IMG/VR virus record: IMGVR_UViG_3300042455_001086
Location: 62,001-126,000 of that record
Strand: one strand, 5' to 3'
Length of the DNA stretch: 64,000 nt
Shown: positions 888 to 56,522 of the stretch, one piece after another
Layout of the letters: each line of letters begins with the position of its first letter
Numbering within the stretch: the first letter of the stretch is position 1
Position numbers and translations under genes: made by a program
Notes under the pieces: generated by a model
Database searches by the model: none
Seen by the model: only the letters and a program-made list of their open reading frames with translations
What the model was told of the DNA's origin: nothing

Positions 888-1754
888 TTATAATTCACCA
901 CAAATATCAGAAATATCGGATGTGGTTATTTTACTTTTTTTAATTTCACTTTGAACCAATTTATCAAGTTCATCATCATATTTACCTGTTTGTTCAAGAC
1001 CTAAACATCCTTGAAGTTTTTTAATCTGGCCACCAGAAATTCCATCTTTACATCCTTTATAAAACTCACCAGAACAAACAACATAAGATAGATCATCATC
1101 TTTTTCCGTTTCTGAACCCTTATTACCCCCACCTGGATCACGAAGACCTTCGTCCTCTTTGGTTTTATTTTCAATTTTTTTATAACCTGGAACATCTCCA
1201 TCAACTTCCATTGTTTTCTTTACAGCACCTGATAAACCATTCATTACAATTGTGTCAAAATTTTGATAAACCTCATCCATCAAAACTTCACCCAAGTCTT
1301 GAGTATAAAGTTTTTCATATTCTTTTTTAACTTTACAATAATCACCAATTGATCTTATTTTCTTTAATAATTTTGTTACAGTTTCATTATATGTTCCCCA
1401 ATCCATCCCCAATGTGTACCAATCACTCCAATTAAAAGACTTATTTAATTTTTTTGCAATATATTGATAATCATTTGGGTTGTTAAATGTTTTTAATTTA
1501 CTAGAAGTTGGTATATCACACCCTTTATTGATTTGACTAAAAGCATCTTTACTTTTTTGTCCGGTTAATGAATCCCAATTTTTATAAAGTGCCGCAGCAC
1601 CACCAGCCGCAAGACCAATACCAAGTAATGTCAAAAAAAACTCGTTTAGTGGTTCTTTATCCTCCTTTAGATACAATTGGTTTGTTGCTTTTTTGTGCAT
1701 TTCAAGGATTCTCTGTTTCTCATATTGATCCAAAAAATATAAAGGTTTTTTCAT
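888..1754 (-). CDS. Putative virion protein with EKxRILxMH leader, TM segment and C-terminal peptidoglycan-binding-like domain
   Basis: EKQRILEMH; hydrophobic FFLTLLGIGLAAGGAAAL; IKKLQGCLGLEQTGKYD resembles PG_binding_1. Confidence 0.6.
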   Translation of the reverse strand: MKKPLYFLDQYEKQRILEMHKKATNQLYLKEDKEPLNEFFLTLLGIGLAAGGAAALYKNWDSLTGQKSKDAFSQINKGCDIPTSSKLKTFNNPNDYQYIAKKLNKSFNWSDWYTLGMDWGTYNETVTKLLKKIRSIGDYCKVKKEYEKLYTQDLGEVLMDEVYQNFDTIVMNGLSGAVKKTMEVDGDVPGYKKIENKTKEDEGLRDPGGGNKGSETEKDDDLSYVVCSGEFYKGCKDGISGGQIKKLQGCLGLEQTGKYDDELDKLVQSEIKKSKITTSDISDICGEL

Positions 1755-1999
1755 AATAATGTATTTGCTTTTCCTCTTGTTAATTTATTTAAAGATTTCC
1801 AGGTTACTTTATAGTCAATTTGATTTGCAACACTCCTTGTAAGTCCGGTTTCCCACTTTGTTACAGTCGGATAACCATTGCCACCACCAGAAGTCGCCGT
1901 TGATCCACCACCTTCTTCTTGTTCATCAATTTCACCTTCGCTTTTATCACTAAAAGTAAATTTTTGCATAATTGAAATTAAATCTTCAAGATTATCCAT
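1751..1999 (-). CDS. Hypothetical phage protein (TKWE...TRxxAN duplicated motif)
   Basis: 82-aa ORF; TATTTAT upstream. Confidence 0.65.
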   Translation of the reverse strand: MDNLEDLISIMQKFTFSDKSEGEIDEQEEGGGSTATSGGGNGYPTVTKWETGLTRSVANQIDYKVTWKSLNKLTRGKANTLL

Positions 2000-2050
2000 A
2001 GAATATCTTTTAATATAAATATACCTATGGTATGAAAAAAAATATAAGGA

Positions 2051-2362
2051 TTAAAAACTTTCTACCTTTGGTAGTTTTTCTGGATATACAATATAATATT
2101 CGTTTAGGAAAGAAAAAAGAGTATCTTCATCTATTGTCGGAAATTCATCTTCAAAATCATCCTCGTCTTCAAAATCATCATCCAATGTATTAAAAAAATC
2201 GTAACTTTCTTCAATTAGATTATATCCAAATTCTTTTGACTCATCCAAATTGATAATATCATTTCTTACCTCATCCTCTGAATCAATTGTAAGACGAAAT
2301 GTAATTTCCATCCTTTTTGTATCTTCATAAATGTAATAAGAAACAATTTCTCTAACTTCCAT
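2051..2362 (-). CDS. Acidic hypothetical protein
   Basis: 103-aa ORF, D/E rich, tightly packed in operon. Confidence 0.65.
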   Translation of the reverse strand: MEVREIVSYYIYEDTKRMEITFRLTIDSEDEVRNDIINLDESKEFGYNLIEESYDFFNTLDDDFEDEDDFEDEFPTIDEDTLFSFLNEYYIVYPEKLPKVESF

Positions 2363-2364
2363 TA

Positions 2365-2940
2365 TTATTTGATAATTCTTTTAAACATACTAAGAGATTC
2401 ATCAAGTTTTACAATGAAATCTTCTTTTAAATCATCTGGAACATCTTTAATTAGATCAATAGATAATTTATTATCAAAATCAATTTCATCATCTTCATCG
2501 ATTTCATATTCTTCATCATCTAAATAATCATCTTCAATAGCCATCATATCGGAGAAATCTTCCTCATCATCATAGTATGGATCATACATACTTCGGTCTT
2601 TATAGTCATCAGAATTTCCAGTAGAAAAGAATTCATATTCATCATCTCTATCCTCAACATCATCAAAATCTACGGTTCCATTTTTTAAATCATCTGGACC
2701 GTCAGCAATCTTATCAAGAGGAATGTGTGACTCATTTATTCCAACATTTGTATAAGGTTTAACATTACCTTTATTTGATACAACAATACCACCCTTATCA
2801 TTCGCAAAATCTTGAACATATAATGGTTGTGTATTTGATTGTTGTCCAAATTGTGTTACATAACCATCATATATTGTTTTGTGTTGATCCAAAATATTAT
2901 TTTTTTCGGTTTGTGACATTTTAAAGAAATATTGGTTCAT
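2365..2940 (-). CDS. Acidic hypothetical protein with EKxxILxxH leader
   Basis: MSQTEKNNILDQH; long D/E tract. Confidence 0.7.
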   Translation of the reverse strand: MNQYFFKMSQTEKNNILDQHKTIYDGYVTQFGQQSNTQPLYVQDFANDKGGIVVSNKGNVKPYTNVGINESHIPLDKIADGPDDLKNGTVDFDDVEDRDDEYEFFSTGNSDDYKDRSMYDPYYDDEEDFSDMMAIEDDYLDDEEYEIDEDDEIDFDNKLSIDLIKDVPDDLKEDFIVKLDESLSMFKRIIK

Positions 2941-2953
2941 ATTTTGTTTTTTT

Positions 2954-3262
2954 TTAAAAATTTTTATTGAGAATATCTCTCTTTGTTCTTACGAGAACAA
3001 TTTTATTTTCGGTTAGCGATTCTTCACTACCATCAATTTGAACTATTTTTTTCCAGCTATCAGCACCATCAATTAAAGCGAGTTTTGATCCACCAACCCA
3101 TTCAACATAATATATTTTGTCTCCTTGGACCTCACTAACGGATTTAACTTTACCTGGTGTTCCTGGATTTACTGGTGAATATGGATCATCCATTATAACA
3201 CAAATCACCTTGTCCCCAACTTCTAGTGGAGCGTTATTTTCATATTTTATTTTCTTTGCCAT
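2954..3262 (-). CDS. DUF4314-like SH3-fold protein
   Basis: VGDKV..MDDPYSPVNPGTPGKV..VEW..GSKLALI matches the DUF4314 pattern as recalled. Confidence 0.7.
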   Translation of the reverse strand: MAKKIKYENNAPLEVGDKVICVIMDDPYSPVNPGTPGKVKSVSEVQGDKIYYVEWVGGSKLALIDGADSWKKIVQIDGSEESLTENKIVLVRTKRDILNKNF

Positions 3263-3295: not shown

Positions 3296-3916
3296 ATGAA
3301 AATAATAGTAAAAGAATCTCAATATAGAAAACTAATTCTTGAAGAAAGAAAAATTATGTTTGAAAAAAAGTTAGAAAATATGAAAAACTTCTTTGGGGAA
3401 TTAAGTGAAAACATCAAAAACCAGATTGGTTTGGATTTAACCTTTTTATCTACTTGGGGTGTAACTATTGCCGGATTTGTAAAACCAGTTCAAGATTTTA
3501 TTGCAAATAAATTTGACGGAATATCACCTGACGATTTAGTGTTAATGTCTGTTGGTTTAATTTTGGTATATTATCAAAATAATAAAGAAAAATTAAAAAG
3601 TGTTTTAGACGAAATAAAAGAAAGAAACCTAGTTGAGGTATTTGATGATACATTAAAAGTCGGTGAAAGATTAAGAAATGTGTTCGTTAAATTTATAGAA
3701 AGTTTAGCAATACCTACTTTAAAATATTCTAATATATTGGCATATACTTTTATTATCCCACTAATTGGTGATTTGTTTAATTTAGTCCAAGGTGAATCAG
3801 ATATGGTTAATCCAATTGATGTTGTAAAAAGAATTGGTGGATATATTGTTTTAAATTTGAGTGGTGAAATTGTTAAAAGAATTTTATTTGCTATTGTAAG
3901 GAGATTTAAATCTTAA
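3296..3916 (+). CDS. Leader-bearing hypothetical membrane-associated protein
   Basis: MKIIVKESQY leader; hydrophobic segments; TATTTAT 5 nt before ATG. Confidence 0.7.
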   Translation: MKIIVKESQYRKLILEERKIMFEKKLENMKNFFGELSENIKNQIGLDLTFLSTWGVTIAGFVKPVQDFIANKFDGISPDDLVLMSVGLILVYYQNNKEKLKSVLDEIKERNLVEVFDDTLKVGERLRNVFVKFIESLAIPTLKYSNILAYTFIIPLIGDLFNLVQGESDMVNPIDVVKRIGGYIVLNLSGEIVKRILFAIVRRFKS

Positions 3917-5753: not shown

Positions 5754-6368
5754 TTACCAACTTCTTGATGATTTAAGTCCCAATTTTTTTCTATATCTTG
5801 AAACATTACACGCCCAGTAACCAGCTTTTGTTCTATCTTTCTTTTGATCACACTTATGACGAGCTCTAAATGATTTTGCTCTTGATTTACTTGCGTTTCT
5901 AACTCTCAAATTAGGATCACCAAAAGTTACTTTTTTAATATTACCACTTGGTGATTTAACATATACAGCAAATTTCTTTGGTCCTCCTGGTGTCCTAAAA
6001 GGACTATTTAATTTAACATTTTTTCCTCTGTGTTTTGCTTCGGTAATTGGTTCTTCCACCTCAATTGGAGCATCAAGCCAAACTTCCTCACCACTTTCAA
6101 GAATTACCTTTTTACCTAAATCACTTTCAACAATCCAAGTATCTTCTTCATTTAATTGGATTAAACCACGATTATATAATTTTCTTACTTCATTTATTAA
6201 ATTGAAATATTCATCAGAATAAATTCTAAAGATGTTTTCAGATAGTGTAATGTTATTATCCAAATGGTATTTCAAATTTTCAGACACTTTTACATTCTCA
6301 ACTAATCTCATTGAGTGTGAATATATCTCAAGTAATGATTTTCTAATTATATTTTCTAAAATTCTCAT
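5754..6368 (-). CDS. Leader + conserved basic phage domain (DUF6321-like)
   Basis: KLNSPFRTPGGPKKFAVYVK..KKVTFGDP..SFRARHKC..AGYWAC. Confidence 0.65.
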   Translation of the reverse strand: MRILENIIRKSLLEIYSHSMRLVENVKVSENLKYHLDNNITLSENIFRIYSDEYFNLINEVRKLYNRGLIQLNEEDTWIVESDLGKKVILESGEEVWLDAPIEVEEPITEAKHRGKNVKLNSPFRTPGGPKKFAVYVKSPSGNIKKVTFGDPNLRVRNASKSRAKSFRARHKCDQKKDRTKAGYWACNVSRYRKKLGLKSSRSW

Positions 6369-6437: not shown

Positions 6438-6980
6438 ATGAAAAGAAATAGATTAAACGAAAGAGATATTACACGAATCATCAATCGTGTGCTATCCGAA
6501 CAAGAAAACCCAAGTTCAGAAAAAAAAGGTAAAAAGAAGGAAGATGTAAAACCAAGATGTATTCCAGAAAATGTTGTTCCTTTAAATGAGATTGTTGGTT
6601 TTGCAGATGAATACGTAAAATATTCTCCTGGAATTAAAAAAAGAAGAGCCGGCGTAAATTCAATGGTTGATACTATTGGTATTTTAAATAATCTTAGATG
6701 GGCTAACGATATTAAAGACGGTGGAGCACATTTAGCTTATGAAATGATGAACAATCTAAATCGTTTTAGAAATAAAAACTATTACGATGAAACAACTGGT
6801 GATTGTCATAAAGCTATGGATAAAATTCTTGAATTATACAAAGAAAACGAACACGGAACTGAACTTGTTAAAGATATTGAGAGAGTTTTAGCTCTACAAA
6901 CAAAAGATGATGAATATACACCATCACCAAGAGCTAAAGAATATTTAAAACAATGTATTAACCTAATTAAAGGTCAATAA
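6438..6980 (+). CDS. Leader-bearing hypothetical protein
   Basis: RLNERDITRIINRVLSE leader; TATTTAT upstream. Confidence 0.7.
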   Translation: MKRNRLNERDITRIINRVLSEQENPSSEKKGKKKEDVKPRCIPENVVPLNEIVGFADEYVKYSPGIKKRRAGVNSMVDTIGILNNLRWANDIKDGGAHLAYEMMNNLNRFRNKNYYDETTGDCHKAMDKILELYKENEHGTELVKDIERVLALQTKDDEYTPSPRAKEYLKQCINLIKGQ

Positions 6981-9913: not shown

Positions 9914-10864
9914 TTAATATTCTTCTCCACCAAACTCAATTTGGTCTGATGTTGGTTTTGGTTGTTCTATTTTTGTTTGATCACTATCCGGTATTTCAAG
10001 GTCTTGTCCACCATCTATTACTTTACCACCACATAGTTTCTCAACATCAGCATCTGTAAAATAACTTCTACCAATTTTAGCACTTACAGCACTTACTGTG
10101 TTTGGTCCCATTTTACCATCCACTGATAAACCTAAACATCCTTGTATTTTTTTAATTGTATCTGAAATACACCCTTTTACATATGTTTCAGTACAAGCTT
10201 GATATTTTGTACCAGTTCCACCGCCACCACGCTCACGATAAATTATTTTTAGAGTTTCTTTTTTGAGTTTTTCTTTTTCAGCTGGAGATGCACTAGGACA
10301 TGCCCAATTTTGTGCTTCATATTCCGCTTTTGTTTTAAATCCACATTTTTTCGCATTAATTAATACTTGATCTGTAGTCTTAACTATTTGTTTTGTTTTA
10401 CAAACATTATTAAAAGGTTCAACTTGATTTGGTTGTGCGTACCAACTCATCTTTTCTGGATTACCATAATCACCCTCAATATTTTTTATACTTGTATTAT
10501 TTTTAGTACCAAATTTACCAGTAGAACAATTATAATAAACAACAGCTTTATTTTTTTTACCATCGACTATATTATCTTCATCCCCAAAAACACGACCAGT
10601 ATCTGTTGCAACATACTGAGATATGGTAGTTTTGTCAGTTATTAAATATGGTTTTCCATCATTTTTAAATTTTAAAACAAATTTTGTCCCTGGGAATAAT
10701 TTCAACTCTGGATGTTGGGCTATACTATTTTCAAGACTTAATATAGTATTTAAAATATATTCCTTTGGTTGGTTTTTTTGTTCTTGTAATAAACCTTTAT
10801 AATTGTAAAGAGACATTATTTCTCTTTTTTCATCTTCTGTTATTAAAAATCTTTTTGTTCCCAT
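9914..10864 (-). CDS. Leader-bearing protein with C-terminal peptidoglycan-binding-like domain
   Basis: FLITEDEKREIM leader; IKKIQGCLGLSVDGKMGPNT. Confidence 0.65.
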   Translation of the reverse strand: MGTKRFLITEDEKREIMSLYNYKGLLQEQKNQPKEYILNTILSLENSIAQHPELKLFPGTKFVLKFKNDGKPYLITDKTTISQYVATDTGRVFGDEDNIVDGKKNKAVVYYNCSTGKFGTKNNTSIKNIEGDYGNPEKMSWYAQPNQVEPFNNVCKTKQIVKTTDQVLINAKKCGFKTKAEYEAQNWACPSASPAEKEKLKKETLKIIYRERGGGGTGTKYQACTETYVKGCISDTIKKIQGCLGLSVDGKMGPNTVSAVSAKIGRSYFTDADVEKLCGGKVIDGGQDLEIPDSDQTKIEQPKPTSDQIEFGGEEY

Positions 10865-10906: not shown

Positions 10907-11449
10907 TTAATTCATATCCGGTCTTTGGAATGGTTTTCCCTTTCTTAATCTTTTTCTAAATTTAGTATCGGCATCTTTTAGAGCATAAGCATAAGATTCA
11001 ACCCATTCTAAAACAATTGTTGTCATTTCTTCTAATTTACTTTTAACATTTTCTTTAGAAAAAATATCTTCACCCATATTAATTAACATTCTTATTTTTT
11101 CTTGATACGACTCTAATTTTCTATGTAGTATTTCACTAATTTTAATAACTTCCTTATCTGTAAAATCTTGTAGAACAGTTTTTGACACACTATTTATTTC
11201 TGAAATTAAATCAATTGCTTCTTTTAGATTTTCTTTTAAATCTATATATTCAATAGTTTTTGAACTTGTCATTTCAGCTATACCCCTAAAAACCGTCATT
11301 AAATCTTTTAAAGTATCAATCAAAATAGACATAGACTTCCCACCATGTTGTAACATTTGGTCGAAATCATCATATCCAGCAGCCTCTTCTGAAATATAAT
11401 TTACCAATTTCTCCAATTGATGTTCTGTCACAAGTATTTTTTTTCCCAT
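10907..11449 (-). CDS. Leader-bearing helical protein
   Basis: MGKKILVTEHQL leader. Confidence 0.7.
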   Translation of the reverse strand: MGKKILVTEHQLEKLVNYISEEAAGYDDFDQMLQHGGKSMSILIDTLKDLMTVFRGIAEMTSSKTIEYIDLKENLKEAIDLISEINSVSKTVLQDFTDKEVIKISEILHRKLESYQEKIRMLINMGEDIFSKENVKSKLEEMTTIVLEWVESYAYALKDADTKFRKRLRKGKPFQRPDMN

Positions 11450-11561: not shown

Positions 11562-11912
11562 TCATCGCATTCTTTTAATTCTAATTGATAATCCTTCTAA
11601 TTTGGAATTAGTTTTATTAATTGTTTCTGACAAATCTTTCATCAGATTTGTTAATTCGTCTTTTTGCCAATCATCAGCTGATGATTTTGTTAAATCAGAT
11701 GTGATATTATCTATTTGTTGTTTTAACTTTTCATCTTGTATTATTTTTCGTTTAATATTATACAATAAGTCATCAATTTCAGATAAATATTTTGAATAAT
11801 TATAACCTTTACCTCTAAACCAACCTTTAATACCTTCCCAAGTATTGCCTTCGTTAATTATTCTTTTAACGATTTCATCAATATCCTTTTGATTTATTTT
11901 TCTATTATCCAT
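11562..11912 (-). CDS. Leader-bearing coiled-coil protein
   Basis: DIDEIVKRIINE leader. Confidence 0.7.
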   Translation of the reverse strand: MDNRKINQKDIDEIVKRIINEGNTWEGIKGWFRGKGYNYSKYLSEIDDLLYNIKRKIIQDEKLKQQIDNITSDLTKSSADDWQKDELTNLMKDLSETINKTNSKLEGLSIRIKRMR

Positions 11913-12776: not shown

Positions 12777-12869
12777 AAAAATATTTATATTTGTAGAACA
12801 AATCAAATATCTATGAAGACAATATTTTTTATTTTCACACTTTTTATTGTTAGTTTTGTTAATTCACAA
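12777..12869 (+). repeat. 93-bp direct repeat (promoter + signal-peptide coding), copy 1; copy 2 at 14318-14410
   Basis: Two mismatches by manual alignment. Confidence 0.9.
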
Positions 12870-13439: not shown

Positions 13440-14282
13440 TTATTGTGCTTTACTAACACCTATCATCTTACCTAGTGTTATGTTTTGGAGGTAGCCAAAC
13501 AAATAGTCGACATAACCAATTGGTGTTCCACCAGTACCCAATGAGTTATAAAATACGGCACCATCATAATTTCTTATTTTTAACATATTAAAATTTTTAC
13601 CAAATTTTGTCCAATTCGGTTGTAATGTTAAAACTGCTTTGTCACCATCGACAGCTAAATCAGTACCAGATTTTACATTTAAATCCGCTATAATTGCTTG
13701 TTTTACATATTCGGTAGTTATACCATTAGCTCGTTCTGTTTTTTTGGTAATAAAAGGTTTATTAATATCACCAGAATAATTAGTTGTGATTGGACTATCA
13801 AATAGATATATATATTGTTTCTGTTTATCACCAAGTACTTCCTCACCAATATAAAGAGCTTTCGGTACGAATGACATTGATATTAAATTATCTAAATTAT
13901 TATCCTTTATTGGAATTGAAGATCCTTTATATTCCATTGATTGGGCATCAAGAATACCCACCTTCTTTGTAAAAACCAACACATTTTTATATATAATATT
14001 ATCAATTGAACCACCATAGTATTTTTGCATCGTATATGCAATATTTGAAGGTCCAGGAATATAATACGCTCCAGTTTGTTCATATTTTTGAAGTTTAATC
14101 CCAGTTGGTTCAATTGATCTAACTGCTTGTCCGGTTAATTCACCCATAGCTGTTTGTTTCTTCACATAAAGAGGATTTTCTGTTGATGTTCCTTGTTCCA
14201 TTAAATTTTGTTCTGAAATGGCGTTTTTATGTAATCCCAATATTCTTGATTTTTCTTCTTCTGATATGATAATTTTTTTCAT
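13440..14282 (-). CDS. Leader-bearing hypothetical protein
   Basis: MKKIIISEEEKSRILGLH; start moved to 14282. Confidence 0.75.
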   Translation of the reverse strand: MKKIIISEEEKSRILGLHKNAISEQNLMEQGTSTENPLYVKKQTAMGELTGQAVRSIEPTGIKLQKYEQTGAYYIPGPSNIAYTMQKYYGGSIDNIIYKNVLVFTKKVGILDAQSMEYKGSSIPIKDNNLDNLISMSFVPKALYIGEEVLGDKQKQYIYLFDSPITTNYSGDINKPFITKKTERANGITTEYVKQAIIADLNVKSGTDLAVDGDKAVLTLQPNWTKFGKNFNMLKIRNYDGAVFYNSLGTGGTPIGYVDYLFGYLQNITLGKMIGVSKAQ

Positions 14283-14808: not shown

Positions 14809-15303
14809 TTAAGGTTTTTTAACTGGTTGAGATTGTGCAGCGCCAGGTTTTTGAGGTTGTGGTTGGAAACCTGCAACCCAACCGTCAACGGCAGCTTTAA
14901 GACCTGGTTGTGGTAATTGTTGTAATGTTTTCGGTAGATTTTTATTAAAGTTAATATTAAACGCTTGAATGATGGAATTTCCAATTAGTCTTGGTCCACC
15001 CTGAGTTAGCATAATAGAAATGTCTTGAACCTCACCAACTTGTGTGTTTCCATACATAAATTTATATAATACTCTATCACCACTAGCAACTCTTTGCACA
15101 GTTAATTTAGCTTGTGGGAACTGTGGATTTTGTTTTATTTTTAAATCAATTTCTTTATTTAAAATTCCGGCAACTTGATTCATAATCTGAGATACAGTAC
15201 CTTCAGTATCAATTGCTTCAGTTAAAAATTGTTTTGAGATTACACTTTTGTGCATTCCAAGAATTCTTGATCTTTCTTCTTCTGTTATTATTAATTTTCC
15301 CAT
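14809..15303 (-). CDS. Leader-bearing hypothetical protein
   Basis: MGKLIITEEERSRILGMH. Confidence 0.75.
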   Translation of the reverse strand: MGKLIITEEERSRILGMHKSVISKQFLTEAIDTEGTVSQIMNQVAGILNKEIDLKIKQNPQFPQAKLTVQRVASGDRVLYKFMYGNTQVGEVQDISIMLTQGGPRLIGNSIIQAFNINFNKNLPKTLQQLPQPGLKAAVDGWVAGFQPQPQKPGAAQSQPVKKP

Positions 15304-16918: not shown

Positions 16919-17293
16919 TTAGATTTGTTTTTTTCTTTCCCAGTTAAGATACAACCGGTCTTTATACCTTTTTTCAAGAAATGGTTTTAATTCCCAATAC
17001 ATATCCATCACCTTATTTCGGCTGGTCTCATCCCAAAGATGTTCATCATAGTCCTCATCATAATATGTATCAATTTCATCACCCTTTCTTTCGGATATAA
17101 ATTCATGCAAAAGATCACCAATAATATAATCAGAAAAATCTTTAAATTCATTTACGGGGGGTGTTGTAATAATAAAACGATTTACATTCTTGTCAAACCA
17201 TTCCAAATCTTCCATTGTTATTCTTCTTTTAAGAAACTGGGGAAGATTCAAAAATAATGTTTCATATTGCGATTCTGTGATTATTATTTTCAT
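16919..17293 (-). CDS. Leader + RR-family domain
   Basis: MKIIITESQY; FLKRRI. Confidence 0.75.
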   Translation of the reverse strand: MKIIITESQYETLFLNLPQFLKRRITMEDLEWFDKNVNRFIITTPPVNEFKDFSDYIIGDLLHEFISERKGDEIDTYYDEDYDEHLWDETSRNKVMDMYWELKPFLEKRYKDRLYLNWERKKQI

Positions 17294-17311
17294 ATAAATA
17301 AATATAACAAA

Positions 17312-17623
17312 TTAACAATCACTATCATTCCACAGTGAAATAAAATCATTGTAAAATTCATCATACATTAAATCGGTTATAATATCCCGTCCGTGGTCTT
17401 CGGTTTCATCGGAGAATACCTCATTATCCCTTTCATATCCTTCATCCCCATAAAAGAAACTAATACCTTGGTCAATACAAAACTCGGCATAATCCTCACC
17501 ATCCTCAAAATTACAAGGATCTTGAATTTCGGTTTGATAAGTAATTATATCCTTAACTTCCTGGATTCTTCTTAATCTTTTAAGAAGTTCTTTGTTTTGA
17601 GTTTCAGTAATTATTATTTTCAT
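17312..17623 (-). CDS. Leader + RR-family domain
   Basis: MKIIITETQ; LRRI. Confidence 0.75.
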   Translation of the reverse strand: MKIIITETQNKELLKRLRRIQEVKDIITYQTEIQDPCNFEDGEDYAEFCIDQGISFFYGDEGYERDNEVFSDETEDHGRDIITDLMYDEFYNDFISLWNDSDC

Positions 17624-17900: not shown

Positions 17901-18146
17901 TTATAATTTTGATTCTATGGTTTGAAGAATATTTTTTAACTTACGAGTTAAACTTCTTAAATTATCAAGTTCATCACTCATTCTTTTGTATTCCCCTTTT
18001 CTTGTTAAGACATCATATTCCTCCATTGATCTTGCAAGTTTTTGAGATACGTTTCTGTACTCATCTCTTATCGATCCCAGAGATCCCCGGTTTTCATTTA
18101 AAACCTTTCTTGCAATTCTTGTGATATCTTTTTCTGTTAGTCTCAT
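17901..18146 (-). CDS. Leader-bearing coiled-coil protein
   Basis: MRLTEKDITRIARKVLNE; TATTTAT 4 nt upstream. Confidence 0.75.
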   Translation of the reverse strand: MRLTEKDITRIARKVLNENRGSLGSIRDEYRNVSQKLARSMEEYDVLTRKGEYKRMSDELDNLRSLTRKLKNILQTIESKL

Positions 18147-18361: not shown

Positions 18362-18799
18362 CTATCCTAAAGATAATATGGTTTTTTTAATTTTAGATAT
18401 TACATTACTTGGATTGGAAAAATCAATTTTACTTTTGGATGAATAGTTTTTAGATAAACTATTAAAATCAGTCTTTACTCCCCATTGATTTTCAAATATT
18501 TTACTTTGTATCTCATCACTTGTTATAAAAACTAAATTACCATCACTACCAATACCTAACCCCCAATTTTTTCTTTTACCTTGGTCACTTTTGTTTCCCC
18601 AGTTTAAAGTTGTCATTGGTTTATTTTTATATTTAAAATCAATGGTTTTTGGATTATTCCCATCTGAGTCGGTCACTAGTTTTAAACGATTTTTAATTGT
18701 TACCCAATTGTCGTTGGTCGTCATTTCTTCTTCCTCTATGATTATTCTTTTAACGATACGAGCTAAATCTGATTCAGTAAGTCTTATAATTTTTTTCAT
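18362..18799 (-). CDS. Leader-bearing hypothetical protein
   Basis: MKKIIRLTESDLARIVKRII. Confidence 0.75.
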   Translation of the reverse strand: MKKIIRLTESDLARIVKRIIIEEEEMTTNDNWVTIKNRLKLVTDSDGNNPKTIDFKYKNKPMTTLNWGNKSDQGKRKNWGLGIGSDGNLVFITSDEIQSKIFENQWGVKTDFNSLSKNYSSKSKIDFSNPSNVISKIKKTILSLG

Positions 18800-19237: not shown

Positions 19238-19981
19238 TCAAATTGTCAGTTTTAACTTATTAACATTAACTTGTGGATAAAAATAATTAATCTCAAGATT
19301 GATTGGTTCTTTCTCATCTCTCCATCTAATATAAAAGTCACTACCAGATCCAAGATCCATTAGTTCGTCATCAGTTCTTCCTTCAAACTTTGTGTACTGC
19401 ATTGATTGGGGAATAAGATTATAATACTTATTTAATAACTCATTTAACTTATCGTTAAAGTTGTTTTCATATTCATCCTTATAAAGATTATCAACATATC
19501 TTCTTAGATACATTCCTCGTTCTCTAAGTAAATCAAACATATGTTCTTTTAAATATTCTTCTAGTTTTTTCGGCGGTGTGGTCCCGGTAATTTTATAGAA
19601 CTTATTTAAATCAATATCCATATCAACAGAAAGATATGTTCCACCTGAATTGTCGGTTGGTCTTACATTCGAAAGGTAGGGATAATGTTTTTTAATCATC
19701 TTTGATAGAATATCAAATCCTTTTTGTTTTTCATTGATTGATTCATTCATTGGTTGGGCATTCTTTTCTTCAATATCCATTTCCCCAATGATCTTTGTAT
19801 TTTCATCCAATGAATCTTTCCACACATTATATTCTTCTTCACCATTAAACTCCATTAACTTTGATTCGTAGTAATCCCCCTGGTCGTCAGTTATGTGTAG
19901 GGCAATTCCCTTTGTTATTGGCTTATCTTCTTCCAATAATAATTTGGTTAATTGTTCTTCTGTTATAATATACTTTTTCAT
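19238..19981 (-). CDS. Leader-bearing two-module hypothetical protein
   Basis: MKKYIITEEQL; internal SINE junction. Confidence 0.7.
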   Translation of the reverse strand: MKKYIITEEQLTKLLLEEDKPITKGIALHITDDQGDYYESKLMEFNGEEEYNVWKDSLDENTKIIGEMDIEEKNAQPMNESINEKQKGFDILSKMIKKHYPYLSNVRPTDNSGGTYLSVDMDIDLNKFYKITGTTPPKKLEEYLKEHMFDLLRERGMYLRRYVDNLYKDEYENNFNDKLNELLNKYYNLIPQSMQYTKFEGRTDDELMDLGSGSDFYIRWRDEKEPINLEINYFYPQVNVNKLKLTI

Positions 19982-21519: not shown

Positions 21520-21874
21520 TTATGTTTTATATCAGTTAAGCAAGGTTAAACCTTGCAATCAAGATATAATTAGTAATCCCTTTCACTACCACATTCATTT
21601 TAGTCTGTAATCACCACACCAAAATATAATATACATACAACACTAAAATATAACTTTGGTACAAAGTTGTCTGGATAGTTGTACCATATCATTATACCAA
21701 ATGTGTTATTATATTTTGTGTACCATATTGGTCACTAATACTGGGGGGGACCCATTAAAATGGGGGAAAAAGATTAGAACATATGAGTGAATGAAAAAGG
21801 AGACCGGATGAGGTCTCCCTTTGTAATGAGTGAGTATGTTGTAATGTTTTTACCTATTTAATAATCTTTAGCTC

Positions 21875-21913
21875 TTACCTTAATATTCTTCTTATGGATT
21901 CTTGTAGGTTCAT
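21875..21913 (-). pseudogene. Empty leader cassette: MNLQESIRRILR*
   Basis: Leader DNA identical to neighbours, but GAA codon replaced by TAA. Confidence 0.7.
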
Positions 21914-38926: not shown

Positions 38927-40219
38927 ATGAAAGAACTCATACGGAACATATTAATGGAAGAAATATCAAACCCGGAACAAATAACAAGAAAATATTTATC
39001 CAGATTAAATCTTGAACCTTGGGAAGATAAAAAATACAATATGCAATATCTTGTTGAACCAAAATCAAGAAGGATAATTTTTCTTTCGGTTCCAAATGAT
39101 TTTGAATGTTCGATTCTTGTTCTTGAGCACTTTTATACTATGTTAAAGATGTTTTTCAAAAATGATGAGCAAGAAATGACATATTTTGTTTATGATTACC
39201 TAAAAGAAAACGGATTAAACCTACCATTTCACAAAGAAGATTTTTGTATTTCAAGTAGTGAAGATACAGGAATTGTAAGTAATGAAGATGGTGATGAACC
39301 GATTAAAAAATATAATTTAAGTGAAGGAAGAAAGCCAAGTTTGGAAAATAAATTTGTTAAATCCTGGCTTTCAAAATTTGAGAATCTAAAAAAATATAAA
39401 AGTGAGGATGATAGATACATATATCTTGCTGGTAAATCTGGACAAATTGTTGTTAAACTAGACACACAAATAAATGAAACTTACGTAAATTCCGAATTAA
39501 TATTTAAACCTATTGAAAATATTATTGGATTAACAAACGCAAGAAGAAAAATAATTGGTTGGTTACTTGATACATATCATTTACCTGGAATGGGCTATGT
39601 TCTTTTTAGAAGTCAAGAAAGTTTGGGAAAGATTGGTGGTGATGCAATTCCATATAATCAAGAAGCAATCAACGAATCGGAAGAGAAATCAAAACTTGAA
39701 AGGTTCTTTATTAAAAGGTGGGATGATCAAAAAAAACAAGGTATAACACCAAATATAATGAATTTACATTTGTTTGGTCTTCAATCACATAGAGATGAAA
39801 TCTTACAATATTTTATAAAATATATGAATCTTAAAGATGTCAATAGTCGAGCTGAGGCTTTTAAAAGTTATTTACTTTCACAAGTATTCACAGAAAAACA
39901 AATAAAATTAATGGCAGAATTTTTTGAACGAGGAAAGATTACTGTCAAATTTAATAATGTCGAGTTTTTTGAAAATGAAAAATATAATGCTTTTGACTTG
40001 GATATAGAATTTGTTGTTTTGGATGGCTCTTTTTATAGTGAAGACATTGGCGAAAATGTAAATTTCTCATCTGGTGATATACCTTTTGATGATATGATGG
40101 AATATTTTGAATTTAAAGGAGTCGTTGAAAATGTGCTTGAAGGGTTTGTAGCTGATGTTTTAGAATCTTTTGGGTATGACACAGACGAAGATTTCGCTAG
40201 TATTAATATTAAATGGTAA
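38927..40219 (+). CDS. Leader-bearing three-module hypothetical protein
   Basis: MKELIRNILMEE; junctions NLSE and AINE. Confidence 0.75.
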   Translation: MKELIRNILMEEISNPEQITRKYLSRLNLEPWEDKKYNMQYLVEPKSRRIIFLSVPNDFECSILVLEHFYTMLKMFFKNDEQEMTYFVYDYLKENGLNLPFHKEDFCISSSEDTGIVSNEDGDEPIKKYNLSEGRKPSLENKFVKSWLSKFENLKKYKSEDDRYIYLAGKSGQIVVKLDTQINETYVNSELIFKPIENIIGLTNARRKIIGWLLDTYHLPGMGYVLFRSQESLGKIGGDAIPYNQEAINESEEKSKLERFFIKRWDDQKKQGITPNIMNLHLFGLQSHRDEILQYFIKYMNLKDVNSRAEAFKSYLLSQVFTEKQIKLMAEFFERGKITVKFNNVEFFENEKYNAFDLDIEFVVLDGSFYSEDIGENVNFSSGDIPFDDMMEYFEFKGVVENVLEGFVADVLESFGYDTDEDFASINIKW

Positions 40220-40797
40220 TGAAAGAATTAATTAGAAAAATATTAAGGGAAAATACAGATTATGACATCATTAAAAAGATTGTAACAAAATCTTTTGAAC
40301 GACAAGTCAATTCTGGTCAAATCCCAAAGATTAACTTTTTGGATTTAAAAAGAAAGGGATTATCTGATTATCAAGACGAGGTTTTTGATATATATCACGA
40401 TTTTGTTGGCAACTCAGAGGGAGCTTTTAAGTTATTTGACAAATATATGACTGGTAAAATAATTACCGATGTTGATATGAGAAATTTTGGTATTAAAGTT
40501 GATCCAGAAGATCAATATAAAGTTAGAATAACAGGAATTAACAATCCAGATTATAAAGGTAAAAGAATTGTAGGAACTAATGAGGAATTGGAGTTTGGTT
40601 TTGAATTAGTGTATGGGCAATTTATAACATCAAGAGGTATTTTAACTATAGACGAATTATATAGTGAGGAACACGATGATATTTGGCTTGATGTTACGGA
40701 TAATTTAAGATCGGAAATTGAATACTATGTTTGGAGTATAGCTGAAAATGATTTTGGTCTTATATTTGAAGATTGTACCTCACATTGGAATGACTAA
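40219..40797 (+). CDS. Leader-bearing protein similar to the C-terminal module of 38927
   Basis: MKELIRKILRE; TAATG overlap with upstream stop. Confidence 0.75.
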   Translation: MKELIRKILRENTDYDIIKKIVTKSFERQVNSGQIPKINFLDLKRKGLSDYQDEVFDIYHDFVGNSEGAFKLFDKYMTGKIITDVDMRNFGIKVDPEDQYKVRITGINNPDYKGKRIVGTNEELEFGFELVYGQFITSRGILTIDELYSEEHDDIWLDVTDNLRSEIEYYVWSIAENDFGLIFEDCTSHWND

Positions 40798-54716: not shown

Positions 54717-55085
54717 TTATCTTGCAATTTCCTTTGCTTGTCGTCTTAATTCTTTTGCTTCAGCTTCGAGTTCTCTGGCTCTACCAAGTAATGAATTTAT
54801 TTCTTCGGCGGTTTCCGGTGTCATATACTCAATGTAATCTGCACTATGACGATTGTGCATTCCTGTTAAATATTTTTTCTTTGGGACTTTATCTATTTTA
54901 ACATATTTCCCATCTTTCATCAAATACATAAACTTACCTTGTACTTTATTTCTTAAAATATCGGCAGACCAAGTTCCGGTATCATCAATATCCGATTTTT
55001 TAATGATGTTAAATTTATGATCTTCAACAACACGATTAACAATTCTTGTCAAATCAGATTCGGTAAGTTTTATGATTTTTTTCAT
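54717..55085 (-). CDS. Leader-bearing protein
   Basis: MKKIIKLTESDLTRIV. Confidence 0.75.
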   Translation of the reverse strand: MKKIIKLTESDLTRIVNRVVEDHKFNIIKKSDIDDTGTWSADILRNKVQGKFMYLMKDGKYVKIDKVPKKKYLTGMHNRHSADYIEYMTPETAEEINSLLGRARELEAEAKELRRQAKEIAR

Positions 55086-55094
55086 AACAATAGA

Positions 55095-55466
55095 TTATTT
55101 AATTATTTTTTGTTCCAGAACACCAATCAATTGTTTTGTATATAAATCAATGACATTTTGATATTCAGAAATCAACTTATTTACATTTTCGGTTAGTTTT
55201 ACTAATTTGGAATGTTCGTCATCAGATAAAAAATAAAATGTTGTTTTCGGTAGATCATCTTTTATATTTTTTACCTTAACTATTTTATAATCACCCTTTT
55301 TATTTAAATCTAAATAATATGGTTTATAGCCTTCTGATATGAGTTTTTGATTCCAAGTGTTTGATATTTGTGATCCATATACAATTCTATCACTTTTGGA
55401 TTCTTTTATTATCTTACCAACAATTCTTGTTAAATCCGATTCAGTAAGTTTTATGATTTTTTTCAT
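55095..55466 (-). CDS. Leader-bearing protein
   Basis: MKKIIKLTESDLTRIV; leader DNA near-identical to that of 54717. Confidence 0.75.
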   Translation of the reverse strand: MKKIIKLTESDLTRIVGKIIKESKSDRIVYGSQISNTWNQKLISEGYKPYYLDLNKKGDYKIVKVKNIKDDLPKTTFYFLSDDEHSKLVKLTENVNKLISEYQNVIDLYTKQLIGVLEQKIIK

Positions 55467-55477
55467 AATAATAAATA

Positions 55478-55849
55478 TCACATTCTTTCAAAATAGAAAA
55501 CAACAGGAATATTTGTCTCCTGGATTAAACCAAAATCTTTTGCCATTCGGTAATTATTATTGTGATTGTTTAATCTTTCTATTTGAAGTCCGATTTCTTT
55601 TCTAAACATCTCAAGATTGAATGTTGATTTCCACCGGTTACATCTCGCACAGCTTGGCATTAAATTTTCAAAATCATCGGTTCCCCTTTCAACACCCCAA
55701 ACTTCAAGGGTTGTTACTTTATCATTCCGGTATAATGGTTTGATGTGGTCCACTTGCATTTGTTTTATGGTAATTTCCTTACCACAATAACCACAATGTC
55801 CATCACATTTATTATAAACTTCTTGTCTGTTTATTTTGGTTTTGGACAT
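55478..55849 (-). CDS. HNH endonuclease
   Basis: CGYCG..QVDHIKP..NLMPSCARCN. Confidence 0.88.
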   Translation of the reverse strand: MSKTKINRQEVYNKCDGHCGYCGKEITIKQMQVDHIKPLYRNDKVTTLEVWGVERGTDDFENLMPSCARCNRWKSTFNLEMFRKEIGLQIERLNNHNNNYRMAKDFGLIQETNIPVVFYFERM

Positions 55850-55859
55850 TAATTTAATT

Positions 55860-56522
55860 TTACAAATGCGACATTAAAATATCAAGATAATAATCAATAA
55901 TTTCTGGATGAACATCTTTTACTTCACGATTAATTAAAATACTACCACTAAATTTTTCTTCAGATAGTAGCTCGTGAGTTTCTTTAAAGTGTTCACCAAG
56001 GGCATTATTATAAACTCTCACTCTTTTTGTGTTTTCAATATCTTCGTCTGTACCAGTTTTCTTATCTGGTGCCCCAAAATAAGCAAACGAGGCATTTGGT
56101 CGTTCGGATAGTATCCTTTCAATTTCATCAATCATTATTGACAAAATCTTTAATGTAATTTTTTCATTAGTCCTAAAAGAATACTTATCACTATGGGTAG
56201 CACCGATTGACGCTAATTTACTTTGTTTTGAATAAAATTCTGGTTGTAGTTTTGGATAAAATGAAATGATAAAGAAATCATATTTGTATTCTTCTATTTC
56301 AACTATATATTTAAAACCAGAAAAAGTTTTAGGTTTTCCATCAATGATTTCGGTTCTTTCTGGTGTAACAAACGTAAAAATTTTACCACCAATGAAATTA
56401 CTACCATCATCTTTTATTGGTAAGTTTTGGGAATATCTCCAATTATAATCACTTTTTAATTTTTCGGCTCGTTCTTTTGAAAAAACAATTTCTTTAAGTA
56501 TTTTTCTAATCGTTTTTTTCAT
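55860..56522 (-). CDS. Leader-bearing hypothetical protein
   Basis: MKKTIRKILKE. Confidence 0.7.
   Translation of the reverse strand: MKKTIRKILKEIVFSKERAEKLKSDYNWRYSQNLPIKDDGSNFIGGKIFTFVTPERTEIIDGKPKTFSGFKYIVEIEEYKYDFFIISFYPKLQPEFYSKQSKLASIGATHSDKYSFRTNEKITLKILSIMIDEIERILSERPNASFAYFGAPDKKTGTDEDIENTKRVRVYNNALGEHFKETHELLSEEKFSGSILINREVKDVHPEIIDYYLDILMSHL

What the first reader, a model, noticed from the sequence alone, without database searches (positions are those of the whole stretch)
888..56522. About 35 unrelated proteins share short N-terminal leaders: candidate generalised capsid-targeting / prohead-protease cargo system
Seen: two leader classes precede unrelated domains. Class A, MK(K)II(I/R/K)(L)TE(S/E)(Q/D/E), occurs at 3296, 6438, 9914, 10907, 11918, 13440, 14809, 16919, 17312, 17901, 18362, 19238, 26973, 32481, 33503, 33694, 54717 and 55095. 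Class B, MNLQE(S/N)IRRILREE or MKxLIRKILxE, occurs at 6368, 22371-29473, 30645, 38927, 40219 and 56522. Both contain or end in [ILV]-x-E. Established: T4 internal proteins carry an N-terminal capsid-targeting sequence (IPIII MKTYQEFIAE), and protease gp21 cleaves after E in (L/I)-x-E. Inference: this phage tags dozens of enzymes (muramidases, ART-like, Ntn-hydrolase, nuclease-like, ParB-like) for packaging into the head, leader removal and injection, giving a large, swappable virion-delivered effector set. Alternative: the leader is a small dimerisation or docking helix.
Basis: partly seen in the sequence, partly recalled or inferred. Interest (0 to 1): 0.88.

Follow-up and report, generated by a model that had tools for sequence, protein, structure and literature searches.

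The report
Swappable N-terminal tags on phage proteins
About three dozen otherwise unrelated genes in this piece of an uncultured 257-kb freshwater phage begin with the same few short peptide tags, which most likely work like phage T4's capsid-targeting sequence to load a large, exchangeable set of proteins into the virus head; packaging itself has not been shown.

Summary
36 ORFs in the window, plus one internal copy and one orphan copy, start with a 10-22-residue leader. The leaders form five related classes that share the core (D/E)-x-hydrophobic-x-R-I-(L/V)-basic...hydrophobic-x-E. Downstream sequences are almost all unrelated to each other.

The same leaders occur on 185 distinct ORFs in uncultured viral contigs. 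The B1 leader has no match in 185,579 cellular species genomes.

- **Modular:** one cargo family carries A1, B1, B2 or no leader. One orthologue next to the head genes carries A2 or B2.
- **Invariant Glu:** the only invariant leader residue besides Met1 is the terminal Glu of a hydrophobic-x-E motif.
- **T4-type context in relatives:** relatives with these leaders have a T4-type head module (gp20, S77/gp21 protease, scaffold, gp23). Some head-module proteins there carry the leaders.
- **Shared promoter motif:** leader genes share a TATTTAT upstream motif with head and baseplate genes.

Best reading (about 0.5): a greatly expanded T4-like capsid-targeting and propeptide system. Packaging, cleavage and injection are untested. 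The window phage's own protease was not reached. The B1 leader is also conserved at synonymous sites, which suggests a second role as a recombination handle.

The parts
888..1754 (-). A3-like leader gene; leader 1701-1754 (MKKPLYFLDQYEKQRILEMH)
2365..2940 (-). weak A3-like leader gene; leader 2881-2940 (..SQTEKNNILDQH); the only leader gene with no hydrophobic-x-E
3296..3916 (+). A1 leader gene; leader 3296-3346 (MKIIVKESQYRKLILEE); TATTTAT at -12
5754..6368 (-). B2-like leader gene; leader 6327-6368. The Flavobacterium phage immuto homologue (47% identity) aligns from residue 20 and lacks the leader
6438..6980 (+). A2-like leader gene; leader 6438-6500 (..NERDITRIINRVLSE)
9914..10864 (-). A3-like leader gene; leader 10805-10864; TATTTAT at -20
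10907..11449 (-). A1-like leader gene; leader 11387-11449 (MGKKILVTEHQLEKLVNYISE)
11562..11912 (-). A2-like leader gene; leader 11850-11912 (..QKDIDEIVKRIINE). A homologue lies beside a T4-type head module in L097
11918..12739 (-). A3 leader gene; leader 12686-12739 (MKKFIITEAEKSRILGMH); TATTTAT at -22
13440..14282 (-). A3 leader gene; true start 14282; leader 14229-14282
14809..15303 (-). A3 leader gene; leader 15250-15303
16919..17293 (-). A1 leader gene; leader 17264-17293 (MKIIITESQY); TATTTAT at -11
17312..17623 (-). A1 leader gene; leader 17594-17623
17901..18146 (-). short A2 leader gene; true start 18146; leader 18093-18146 (MRLTEKDITRIARKVLNE)
18362..18799 (-). A2 leader gene; leader 18734-18799 (MKKIIRLTESDLARIVKRIIIE)
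19238..19981 (-). A1-like leader gene; leader 19928-19981 (MKKYIITEEQLTKLLLEE)
21874..21912 (-). orphan B1 leader: MNLQESIRRILR then a stop, followed by a terminator-like hairpin; a remnant of a cassette
21916..22371 (-). B1 leader gene; leader 22330-22371 (MNLQESIRRILREE)
22368..22691 (-). B1 leader plus the 84-residue 'FFRRRI' helical domain. AlphaFold model: leader is helix 3-17 at pLDDT about 74, domain at 91-98
22790..23404 (-). B1 leader gene; leader 23363-23404. The 125 nt of promoter plus leader are 94% identical to those of 22368-22691
23434..23943 (-). B1 leader gene; true start 23943; preceded by a terminator hairpin and TATTTAT
24003..24422 (-). B1 leader gene; true start 24422; leader 24384-24422
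24955..25188 (-). B1 leader gene; true start 25188
25190..26128 (-). two leader modules fused in frame. Module 1: B1 leader 26087-26128 plus an ART-fold (KptA/Tpt1-like) domain. Module 2: internal B1 leader 25490-25531 plus a 'RRID' domain
26973..27467 (-). A1 leader gene; leader 27438-27467 (MRIILTESQY)
27489..27875 (-). B1-like leader gene; true start 27875 (MNIRQNIKRILKEE)
28526..29473 (-). B1-like leader plus AAT/Ntn hydrolase. The leader ends 10 residues before Cys23 (VEC-TIAG). The L008 homologue has a different leader in the same place
29497..30645 (-). B2 leader (GTG start; 30610-30645, MKQLIRKILKEE) plus a C-terminal Phage_lysozyme domain
32481..33479 (-). A1 leader (33450-33479) plus PG_binding_1 plus a GH19 muramidase
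33503..33697 (-). A1 leader gene, 64 aa
33694..34194 (-). A1 leader gene
34191..35048 (-). doubtful leader (MMDKIIINE...); weakest member
38927..40219 (+). B2 leader gene; leader 38927-38962 (MKELIRNILMEE); TATTTAT at -12
40219..40797 (+). B2 leader gene; leader 40219-40251 (MKELIRKILRE)
54717..55085 (-). A2 leader gene; leader 55023-55085
55095..55466 (-). A2 leader gene; true start 55466; leader 55401-55466; TATTTAT at -11
55860..56522 (-). B2 leader gene; leader 56490-56522 (MKKTIRKILKE)

Best explanation
The leaders are modular N-terminal propeptides that work like the capsid-targeting sequence (CTS) of phage T4 internal proteins.

Proposed mechanism:
1. The phage is a jumbo myovirus related to Flavobacterium phage immuto and to an abundant freshwater T4-like lineage.
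2. It expresses dozens of accessory proteins late, from the same TATTTAT-type promoters as head and baseplate genes.
3. Each protein carries a short amphipathic helix. Classes B1 and B2 are the helix alone. A1, A2 and A3 have an added MKK-hydrophobic-hydrophobic-hydrophobic-T-E strand in front.
4. The helix docks the protein to the scaffolding core of the assembling prohead.
5. The gp21-family (S77) prohead protease then cuts after the conserved hydrophobic-x-Glu at the end of the leader. This frees the mature protein inside the head for delivery with the DNA.

Shown:
- The leaders, their modularity and their swapping between cargoes.
- Protein-level selection on the peptide, and the invariant Glu.
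- Restriction to viral sequence collections.
- The shared upstream motif with structural genes.
- The T4-type head module and leader-bearing head-module proteins in relatives.

Inferred:
- Late expression, docking, cleavage, packaging and injection.
- That the window phage itself has the S77 protease.

The B1 leader, which is also conserved at synonymous sites, probably doubles as a homology handle through which cargo cassettes are duplicated, fused, deleted and exchanged.
For: 1. **Reality and N-terminal specificity.** Strict patterns match 31 times at N-termini and once internally, against 0 in shuffles.
2. **Unrelated cargo.**. Across the window and relatives, 184 cargo sequences fall into 113 BLAST clusters, 92 of them singletons.
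3. **Virus-only distribution.** The B1 pattern hits 32 IMG/VR stretches and 0 of 185,579 species genomes.
4. **Protein-level selection.** A1 and A2 leaders use synonymous codons as the gene bodies do: Ser as both TCN and AGY, Arg as AGA, CGT and CGA.
5. **Modularity.**
   - The 84-residue FFRRRI domain occurs with B1, B2, A1 or no leader, and as the second module of fusions.
   - The ART-fold cargo occurs with B1 or with 'MNLxEQIxRIKxVMGLNE' leaders.
   - The Ntn hydrolase occurs with two different leaders.
   - The immuto homologue of 5754-6368 lacks the leader.
6. **Orthologue with swapped leaders.** In a 65-93% identical protein encoded next to head modules, the leader is A2 (22 aa) or B2 (14 aa). 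The only invariant leader residues are Met1 and the terminal Glu. Across 102 leader proteins of all classes, that Glu is the only column at 90% or more.
7. **T4-type head module in relatives.** TerL, gp20, S77 protease, scaffold and gp23 occur in the leader-bearing contig L043 and in immuto.
8. **Head-module proteins carry the leaders.** p237, the gene after the capsid gene, has a B2 leader or a short 'KINE', always followed by Ala-Thr/Ser. p241, in the gp67/68 position, starts MKFGxLKSKIExxLxE-SY. A 440-456-aa protein upstream of TerL has KLIRKIVKE-AP.
9. **TATTTAT motif in relatives.** It is conserved upstream of p241 (45/46), protease (44/45), scaffold (32/32) and p237 (17/17). It is absent from operon-internal genes (0/45, 1/47, 2/41).
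10. **TATTTAT motif in the window's contig.** It precedes gp25 and two large tail or baseplate genes. It precedes 19 of 36 leader genes against 7 of 92 others. The extended consensus is the same.
11. **Cargo types.** Cargo matches what is known or predicted to travel in heads: muramidases, an ART-fold protein (compare T4 Alt in PMC9026906) and ART-PolyVal. None of 102 leader proteins from relatives has a replication or nucleotide-metabolism domain.
12. **Precedent.** The T4 CTS is the first 10 residues of IPIII, and gp21 cuts after L/I-x-E. T-even internal proteins are diverse with only the CTS conserved (PMC9026906, PMC3012670).
Against: - No proteomic or experimental evidence exists for any of these proteins.
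- The head module and protease of the window's own contig were not found. The stretches read were record 33.8-173.6 kb and 179.6-210.2 kb. Their presence rests on relatedness and synteny with immuto.
- Hydrophobic-x-E is a short motif, present by chance in 28% of other N-termini.
- In A1 and A3 the conserved Glu is at residue 7-8, and conservation continues after it (SQY; EKSRILGMH). That is odd for a simple cut site.
- Cargo is not basic: median pI 6.2 against 5.5 for other ORFs, not significant. T4 internal proteins are basic.
- Thirty-six or more different cargo proteins in one 64-kb stretch is far beyond any documented CTS set.
- TATTTAT marks a promoter class, not a measured time of expression.
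- AlphaFold gives the leader as a helix of lower confidence than the domain, but this cannot show whether it is free or packed.
Confidence: 0.5

Rival explanations
1. The leader is a docking or oligomerisation helix for a shared partner other than the prohead. Candidates are a phage chaperone or unfoldase (the contig encodes ClpB-like, DnaJ and FKBP proteins), a membrane or polar scaffold, or self-association. It is not removed by the head protease.
For: - The leaders are short amphipathic helices with a heptad-like hydrophobic stripe.
- They are interchangeable modules on unrelated cargo.
- The contig encodes several chaperones.
- Cargo is not basic.
Against: - This does not explain why the terminal Glu is the single invariant residue.
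- It does not explain why conserved head-module proteins carry the leaders with a hydrophobic-x-E-Ala/Ser junction.
- It does not explain the shared promoter motif with head and baseplate genes.
- It does not explain why in-frame fusions keep a full leader between modules.
Confidence: 0.2
2. The conservation is mainly at the DNA or RNA level. On this reading the shared 5' ends are homology handles for cassette recombination, or translation-initiation regions of near-leaderless late mRNAs, and the peptide is a by-product.
For: - The B1 leader keeps rare codons in 45 distinct leader DNAs from about 30 contigs, although the search pattern allowed every synonymous codon. Leader against gene body: AAC 0.82 vs 0.26; CTA 0.68 vs 0.10; TCC 0.81 vs 0.08; ATA 0.93-1.00 vs 0.42; AGG 0.82 vs 0.15.
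- Promoter-plus-leader blocks of 88-125 nt are 93-94% identical between neighbouring genes.
- An orphan leader and in-frame fusions are the expected products of recombination between leaders.
- TATTTAT lies only 4-6 nt before the ATG of many leader genes, so their mRNAs would be almost leaderless.
Against: - A1 and A2 leaders show ordinary synonymous variation, including both Ser codon families, so the peptide itself is selected.
- Leaders also occur at operon-internal starts without the promoter.
- Different leader classes with different DNA replace each other on the same cargo while keeping the peptide pattern and the Glu.
- As the sole explanation this is unlikely. As a second role for B1 it is likely.
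Confidence: 0.12
3. The leader is a localisation or turnover signal acting inside the infected cell, such as a degron or a targeting peptide to a phage-made compartment or the membrane. On this reading it has nothing to do with virions.
For: An N-terminal, transferable tag restricted to viruses. The contig encodes ClpB-like and rhomboid proteins.
Against: - No hydrophobic core or lipobox as in secretion signals.
- No nucleus-forming-phage marker genes were seen in the 167 kb examined.
- This does not explain the leaders on head-module proteins.
Confidence: 0.08
4. The shared N-termini are only the slowest-evolving remnant of one old, much duplicated gene family, with no common function.
For: Tandem arrays and recent duplications exist.
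Against: - Cargo includes distinct known folds: lysozyme, GH19, Ntn hydrolase, ART.
- Homologues exist without a leader or with another leader class.
- There are 113 cargo clusters.
Confidence: 0.05

Closest known systems
Capsid-targeting sequence (CTS) of phage T4 internal proteins IPI/II/III and Alt, removed by prohead protease gp21 (PMC9026906, PMC3012670)
   Same: - A short N-terminal peptide is the only conserved part of otherwise diverse proteins.
- It ends in hydrophobic-x-Glu, the gp21 cut motif.
- The B2 leader (11-12 residues, hydrophobic residues at about 4-5 and 8-9, Glu at 11) has nearly the layout described for the 10-residue T4 CTS: targeting residues 4 and 7, processing residues 8 and 10.
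- The morphogenetic context in relatives is T4-type: gp20, S77 protease, scaffold, gp23.
- An ART-fold cargo parallels T4 Alt.
- The genes sit in a variable, cassette-like region.
   Different: - Scale: at least 36 genes in 64 kb, against a handful per T-even genome.
- At least five leader classes of 10-22 residues, some with an added N-terminal strand.
- Cargo is not basic.
- The lineage is distant: non-T4 replication genes, a sigma-70-like factor, probably a Bacteroidota host.
- No experimental evidence. No detectable sequence homology was tested; the peptides are too short.
Propeptide-processed head, inner-body and ejection proteins of giant phages phiKZ, 201phi2-1 and SPN3US (PMC9026906, PMC5694885, PMC7411985)
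   Same: Jumbo phages that pack tens of different proteins into the head. Many of these proteins lose N-terminal propeptides by cleavage after Glu, carried out by a diverged gp21 homologue. Multiple cut sites per propeptide are described there, as A2 leaders would have (LTE and IxE).
   Different: Those propeptides are long and not a shared, portable short tag. The cargo there forms paralogue families. No chimallin, tubulin or split-RNA-polymerase genes were seen here.
Polyvalent proteins of phages and conjugative elements (ART-PolyVal and muramidase/peptidase domains joined in one giant packaged protein; family definition recalled from memory, Pfam PF18760 hit by tool)
   Same: The domain repertoire is similar: ADP-ribosyltransferase, muramidases, peptidase-like hydrolases. 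One leader protein matches ART-PolyVal. Two-module in-frame fusions occur.
   Different: Here each effector is usually a separate small gene with its own tag, not a domain of one giant protein.
Mobile regulatory cassettes (promoter-stem-loop repeats) that mediate gene shuffling in T4-type genomes (recalled from memory; not checked in the literature tools)
   Same: Repeated terminator-promoter-leader blocks flank small accessory genes. The B1 leader DNA is conserved beyond what coding requires.
   Different: The repeat here extends into the coding sequence and encodes a selected peptide. The promoter motif is the one found before head genes, not an early promoter.

Membership tests
T4-type capsid-targeting sequence / gp21 propeptide system | Short peptide at the extreme N-terminus, transferable between unrelated proteins | tested here: met
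   31 of 32 strict matches are N-terminal. The same cargo occurs with different leaders or none.
T4-type capsid-targeting sequence / gp21 propeptide system | The peptide ends in the protease motif L/I-x-Glu | tested here: met
   35 of 36 in the window against 28% background. A2: 47 of 47, independent of the search pattern. The Glu is the only invariant leader residue. This is sequence level only.
T4-type capsid-targeting sequence / gp21 propeptide system | The same genome encodes a gp21-family (Peptidase_S77) prohead protease and a scaffolding core | tested here: inconclusive
   Both are present in the leader-bearing relative L043 and in its lineage, and in Flavobacterium phage immuto. They were not found in the roughly 167 kb of the window's 257-kb contig that could be read. 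Synteny with immuto places the head module in the unread 210-257 kb.
T4-type capsid-targeting sequence / gp21 propeptide system | Cargo genes are expressed together with head genes (late) | tested here: inconclusive
   Leader genes share the R-TATTTAT-A-w-w-AAA motif with head genes of relatives and with baseplate genes of the same contig. No expression data exist.
T4-type capsid-targeting sequence / gp21 propeptide system | Known prohead or head proteins of the same system carry the same kind of N-terminus | tested here: met
   In relatives, p237, p241, the 440-456-aa protein upstream of TerL and the RYMFF protein beside the head module all do.
T4-type capsid-targeting sequence / gp21 propeptide system | Proteins are found in proheads and virions, processed after the Glu, and are injected | not testable with these tools
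   Needs virion proteomics with N-terminal mapping and fusion experiments.
Sec/Tat/lipoprotein signal peptides | Hydrophobic core of 10 or more residues after a basic N-region | tested here: not met
   The leaders are charged amphipathic helices such as NLQESIRRILREE. True signal peptides occur on other ORFs, for example 12813-13439.
Polyvalent-protein effectors | Effector domains of the polyvalent repertoire | tested here: inconclusive
   One ART-PolyVal hit among 102 leader proteins of relatives. In the window: lysozyme, GH19, Ntn hydrolase and a KptA-like ART fold. Most cargo has no recognisable domain.
phiKZ-type nucleus-forming jumbo phages | Chimallin, PhuZ tubulin, split multisubunit RNA polymerases | not tested
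   None appeared among the Pfam labels of the walked regions, but no dedicated search was made.

The most novel reading that the evidence does not exclude
An abundant group of aquatic T4-like and jumbo phages uses a multi-class, interchangeable capsid-targeting code to load dozens of different, rapidly exchanged proteins into the head and inject them. There are at least 36 in this 64-kb stretch and at least 113 cargo families among relatives. That would be the largest virion-delivered effector repertoire described. In addition, the B1 leader's DNA serves as the recombination handle by which co-infecting phages swap, fuse and delete cargo cassettes.
Probability: 0.3. Interest if true: 0.85.

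Novelty: new variant of a known kind. Interest (0 to 1): 0.62.

Why it matters
**Effector candidates.** If these tags are capsid-targeting sequences, a large share of the 'dark matter' ORFs of abundant freshwater and marine myoviruses would be candidate head-packaged, injected proteins. Candidate functions are counter-defence, host take-over and cell-wall opening. The tag would then pick out such candidates from sequence alone.

**Tool use.** It would give a natural set of short targeting peptides beyond the single T4 example for loading foreign proteins into phage heads.

**Evolution.** It would show how such arsenals evolve: self-contained promoter-leader-cargo-terminator cassettes, with recombination in the leader.

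**If the partner is not the prohead.** A virus-only, five-class, swappable N-terminal tag on more than 180 unrelated proteins would still be an undescribed sorting signal.

Tried and rejected
- **Near-identical DNA in cultured phages:** none found.
- **Literature search for the motif strings:** nothing.
- **Leaders in a 50-kb piece of the 642-kb huge phage LR756502:** none.
- **Homologue search with the leader region alone:** only unnamed metagenomic proteins.
- **Finding the contig's own protease or capsid gene:**
  - Searches with the L043 protease and the immuto capsid protein failed. Two very abundant lineages filled the 600-row and 80-locus limits.
  - Walking the contig used all 12 look-ups. 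It reached baseplate and replication genes but not the head.
- **PHROGs on 20 proteins:** essentially no annotation.
- **PDB sequence searches for the 'nuclease-like' ORF 34191-35048 and for 23434-23943:** nothing significant.
- **Fold search of the FFRRRI helical domain:** no match.
- **Rfam and tRNA scans of the window:** empty.
- **Host-type sigma-70 promoters:** not enriched, 109 found against 118 expected.
- **Basic cargo test:** expected for DNA-associated internal proteins, not met.
- **Secretion-signal and simple-paralogy readings:** considered and rejected for the reasons in the membership table and the rival explanations.
- **Typing the T4 CTS for comparison:** deliberately not done. 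Only the layout described in PMC9026906 was used.

Full report
**What the window is**

The window is 29% G+C and mostly minus-strand genes. It has no tRNA or Rfam match and no near DNA match in cultured phages. It is bases 62,001-126,000 of a 257,166-bp metagenomic contig: JGI Ga0453178_0000004, also IMGVR_UViG_3300042455_001086.

Walking the contig gave record 33.8-173.6 kb and 179.6-210.2 kb.
- It is a myovirus with a gp25-type baseplate gene followed by very large tail and baseplate ORFs.
- It has its own sigma-70-like factor, primase, DnaB, 5'-3' exonuclease and class II RNR.
- It has many accessory genes: ClpB-like, DnaJ, FKBP, rhomboid, holin, RNA ligase, ThyA, a UvrC-like protein.

About ten proteins are 32-52% identical to those of Flavobacterium phage vB_FspM_immuto. 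The order SSB/RecA-like, exonuclease, DnaB, RNR is shared with that phage.

**The observation**

Thirty-six ORFs begin with a conserved leader.

| Class | Typical N-terminus |
|---|---|
| A1 | MKIIITESQY |
| A2 | MKKIIKLTESDLTRIVKRVIxE |
| A3 | MKKxIITEEEKSRILGMH |
| B1 | MNLQESIRRILREE |
| B2 | MKxLIRKILKEE |

- The classes are variations on one core. In an orthologous protein, the A2 leader aligns as an 8-residue strand (KKVVKLTE) placed in front of a B2-type helix.
- Strict patterns hit 31 N-termini and one internal site, against none in 200 shuffles.
- After trimming 25 residues, the proteins show almost no BLASTP similarity to each other.
- Pfam recognises only a lysozyme, a GH19 muramidase with a PG-binding domain, and an AAT/Ntn hydrolase. 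PHROGs adds nothing.
The leaders are at the other end.

**Distribution**

- A fully degenerate back-translation of the B1 leader finds 32 stretches in IMG/VR, on contigs of 18-308 kb at about 30% G+C. It finds none in one genome from each of 185,579 bacterial and archaeal species.
- An A2 pattern finds nine loci.
- In those loci all classes co-occur. Together with the window there are 185 distinct leader ORFs. Their cargo falls into 113 BLAST clusters, 92 of them singletons.
- Of 102 such proteins from relatives, Pfam recognises only DUF2237 (3 proteins) and ART-PolyVal (1 protein). None has a replication or nucleotide-metabolism domain.
- Within the parts of the contig read, the leader genes are concentrated in the window.

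**The peptide is selected, and B1 also at the DNA level**

- A1 and A2 leaders use synonymous codons much as the gene bodies do. Ser appears as both TCN and AGY, and Arg as AGA, CGT and CGA. The amino-acid sequence is therefore what is conserved.
- B1 is different.

| Codon | Share in B1 leader | Share in gene bodies |
|---|---|---|
| AAC | 0.82 | 0.26 |
| CTA | 0.68 | 0.10 |
| TCC | 0.81 | 0.08 |
| AGG | 0.82 | 0.15 |

- In the window, blocks of terminator hairpin, TATTTAT and leader, 88-125 nt long, are 93-94% identical between neighbouring genes.
- There is a leader-only ORF, MNLQESIRRILR followed by a stop.
- There are in-frame fusions of two leader-cargo modules. These recur in relatives either fused or as separate genes.
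- All of this points to recombination within leaders.

**Modularity**

- The 84-residue 'FFRRRI' helical domain occurs with B1, B2 or A1 leaders, with no leader, and as the second module of fusions.
- The ART-fold cargo of 25190-26128 occurs with B1 or with a longer 'MNLxEQIxRIKxVMGLNE' leader. Its AlphaFold model has mean pLDDT 78, and its best fold matches are KptA/Tpt1 and DarT.
- The Ntn hydrolase carries two different leaders in two phages. Both stop shortly before the Cys-Thr-Ile-Ala-Gly that would become the catalytic N-terminus.
- The immuto homologue of 5754-6368 starts where the leader ends.
- In the models, the leader is a helix of lower confidence than the domain behind it.

**Link to head assembly**

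- One leader-bearing contig (L043) holds TerL, the gp20 portal, two small ORFs, a Peptidase_S77 (gp21-family) protease, a scaffold-like protein and the gp23 capsid protein. This is the T4 gene order. Immuto has the same block.
- This lineage is very abundant: more than 7,000 protease homologues.
- Several conserved proteins in and around its head module have leader-type N-termini:
  - p237, the gene after the capsid gene, has a B2 leader in about half of the members and a short 'KINE' in the rest. It is always followed by Ala-Thr/Ser.
  - p241, in the gp67/68 position, starts MKFGxLKSKIExxLxE-SY.
  - A 440-456-residue protein upstream of TerL has KLIRKIVKE-AP.
  - A 65-93% identical protein beside the module has either an A2 or a B2 leader. 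Met1 and the terminal Glu are its only invariant leader residues.
- Across 102 leader proteins of all classes, that Glu is the only column conserved at 90% or more.
- T4 gp21 cuts after L/I-x-Glu, and the T4 CTS is a 10-residue N-terminal peptide ending in that motif (PMC9026906).

**Promoter class**

- TATTTAT (extended: R-TATTTAT-A-w-w-AAA) is conserved upstream of p241 (45/46 distinct upstream regions), the protease (44/45), the scaffold (32/32) and p237 (17/17). It is missing before operon-internal genes (0/45, 1/47, 2/41).
- In the window's own contig it precedes gp25 and two large structural genes. It is frequent in the leader region (0.35-0.53 of genes per 10 kb). It is nearly absent (0-0.08) from the block of tightly packed small genes at record 110-140 kb.
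- In the window it precedes 19 of 36 leader genes against 7 of 92 others, usually only 4-6 nt before the ATG.
- Host-type sigma-70 sites are not enriched.
- I infer that leader genes belong to the same, probably late, expression class as structural genes. Timing was not measured.

**Interpretation**

The best-supported reading is an expanded, multi-class version of the T4 capsid-targeting and propeptide system. Its steps are docking to the prohead core, cleavage after the leader Glu by the S77 protease, and carriage in the head. I put this at about 0.5.

Weak points:
- There is no proteomics.
- The contig's own head module was not reached.
- The cut motif is short.
- In A1 and A3, conservation continues past the early Glu.
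- Cargo is not basic.
- The number of cargo proteins has no precedent.

A docking helix for another partner remains possible (0.2). A purely nucleic-acid-level explanation is unlikely on its own (0.12), but it probably describes a second role of B1.

**Novelty**

The principle is known for T-even phages: diverse internal proteins with only the CTS conserved (PMC3012670, PMC9026906). I found no description of this leader family, its scale, its several interchangeable classes or its lineage. Hence: a new variant of a known kind, conditional on the function.

Noticed in passing
window 21874-21912 (-): A leader-only ORF: a perfect B1 leader (MNLQESIRRILR), then TAA where other copies have GAA, followed by a terminator-like hairpin at 21799-21818. 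It looks like the stump of a lost cassette.
   Followed up: partly
window 25190-26128 (-): Two complete leader-cargo modules in one reading frame, with the second leader at residues 200-213. Relatives have the same pair fused (L019:9939-10799, L003:4835-5683) or the first module alone (P0154, P0155).
   Followed up: yes
window 35045-38498 (-): Four or five tandem paralogues of 224-237 aa (22-29% identity). They have no Pfam or PHROG match and carry their own shared N-terminus (MK(D/E)KLKILFGF(L/F)RGL).
   Followed up: no
window 15383-15817 and 15843-16400 (-): Two adjacent ORFs share an identical first 20 residues (MPLKVDKLIASEIVLNGTEL) and then diverge. This is another shared N-terminal module, of a different kind.
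   Followed up: no
window 12813-13439 and 14354-14773 (+): Two plus-strand ORFs with near-identical signal peptides (MKTIFFIFTLFI(V/L)SFVNSQ) sit between A3 leader genes. One of them is DUF2927. The signal peptide style suggests a Bacteroidota host.
   Followed up: no
window 50495-50722, 60106-60333, 60641-60880; 52135-52665, 52975-53454, 60877-61344 (-): Two small paralogue families are each present in three copies about 8-10 kb apart, inside the tightly packed block that lacks TATTTAT.
   Followed up: no
window, upstream of about 26 genes; for example 17294-17310, 23944-23960: TATTTAT lies only 4-6 nt before the ATG of many leader genes and there is no Shine-Dalgarno sequence. These mRNAs would be leaderless or nearly so. 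Before head genes of relatives the motif lies 21-30 nt upstream.
   Followed up: partly
window 20470-21915: A stretch of about 1.4 kb with only short ORFs and the highest G+C of the window (0.33). No tRNA and no Rfam match.
   Followed up: partly
L223:3070-5154 (same contig, record about 205.0-207.1 kb): A DNA cytosine methylase interrupted by an intein with a LAGLIDADG domain, according to Pfam labels. A 2,241-residue ORF starts just beyond record 210 kb.
   Followed up: no
L035:16007-16417 (related 27-kb contig): A close relative carries an SmpB gene where the window's contig has other ORFs. The contig also encodes ClpB-like, DnaJ, FKBP, rhomboid and sigma-70-like proteins.
   Followed up: no
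L131:2294-2869 (Flavobacterium phage immuto, record 102294-102869): The cultured relative has at least one B2-like leader protein (MKKSELVKLIKEELN...), next to the homologue of window ORF 5754-6368. This makes it a handle for experiments.
   Followed up: partly
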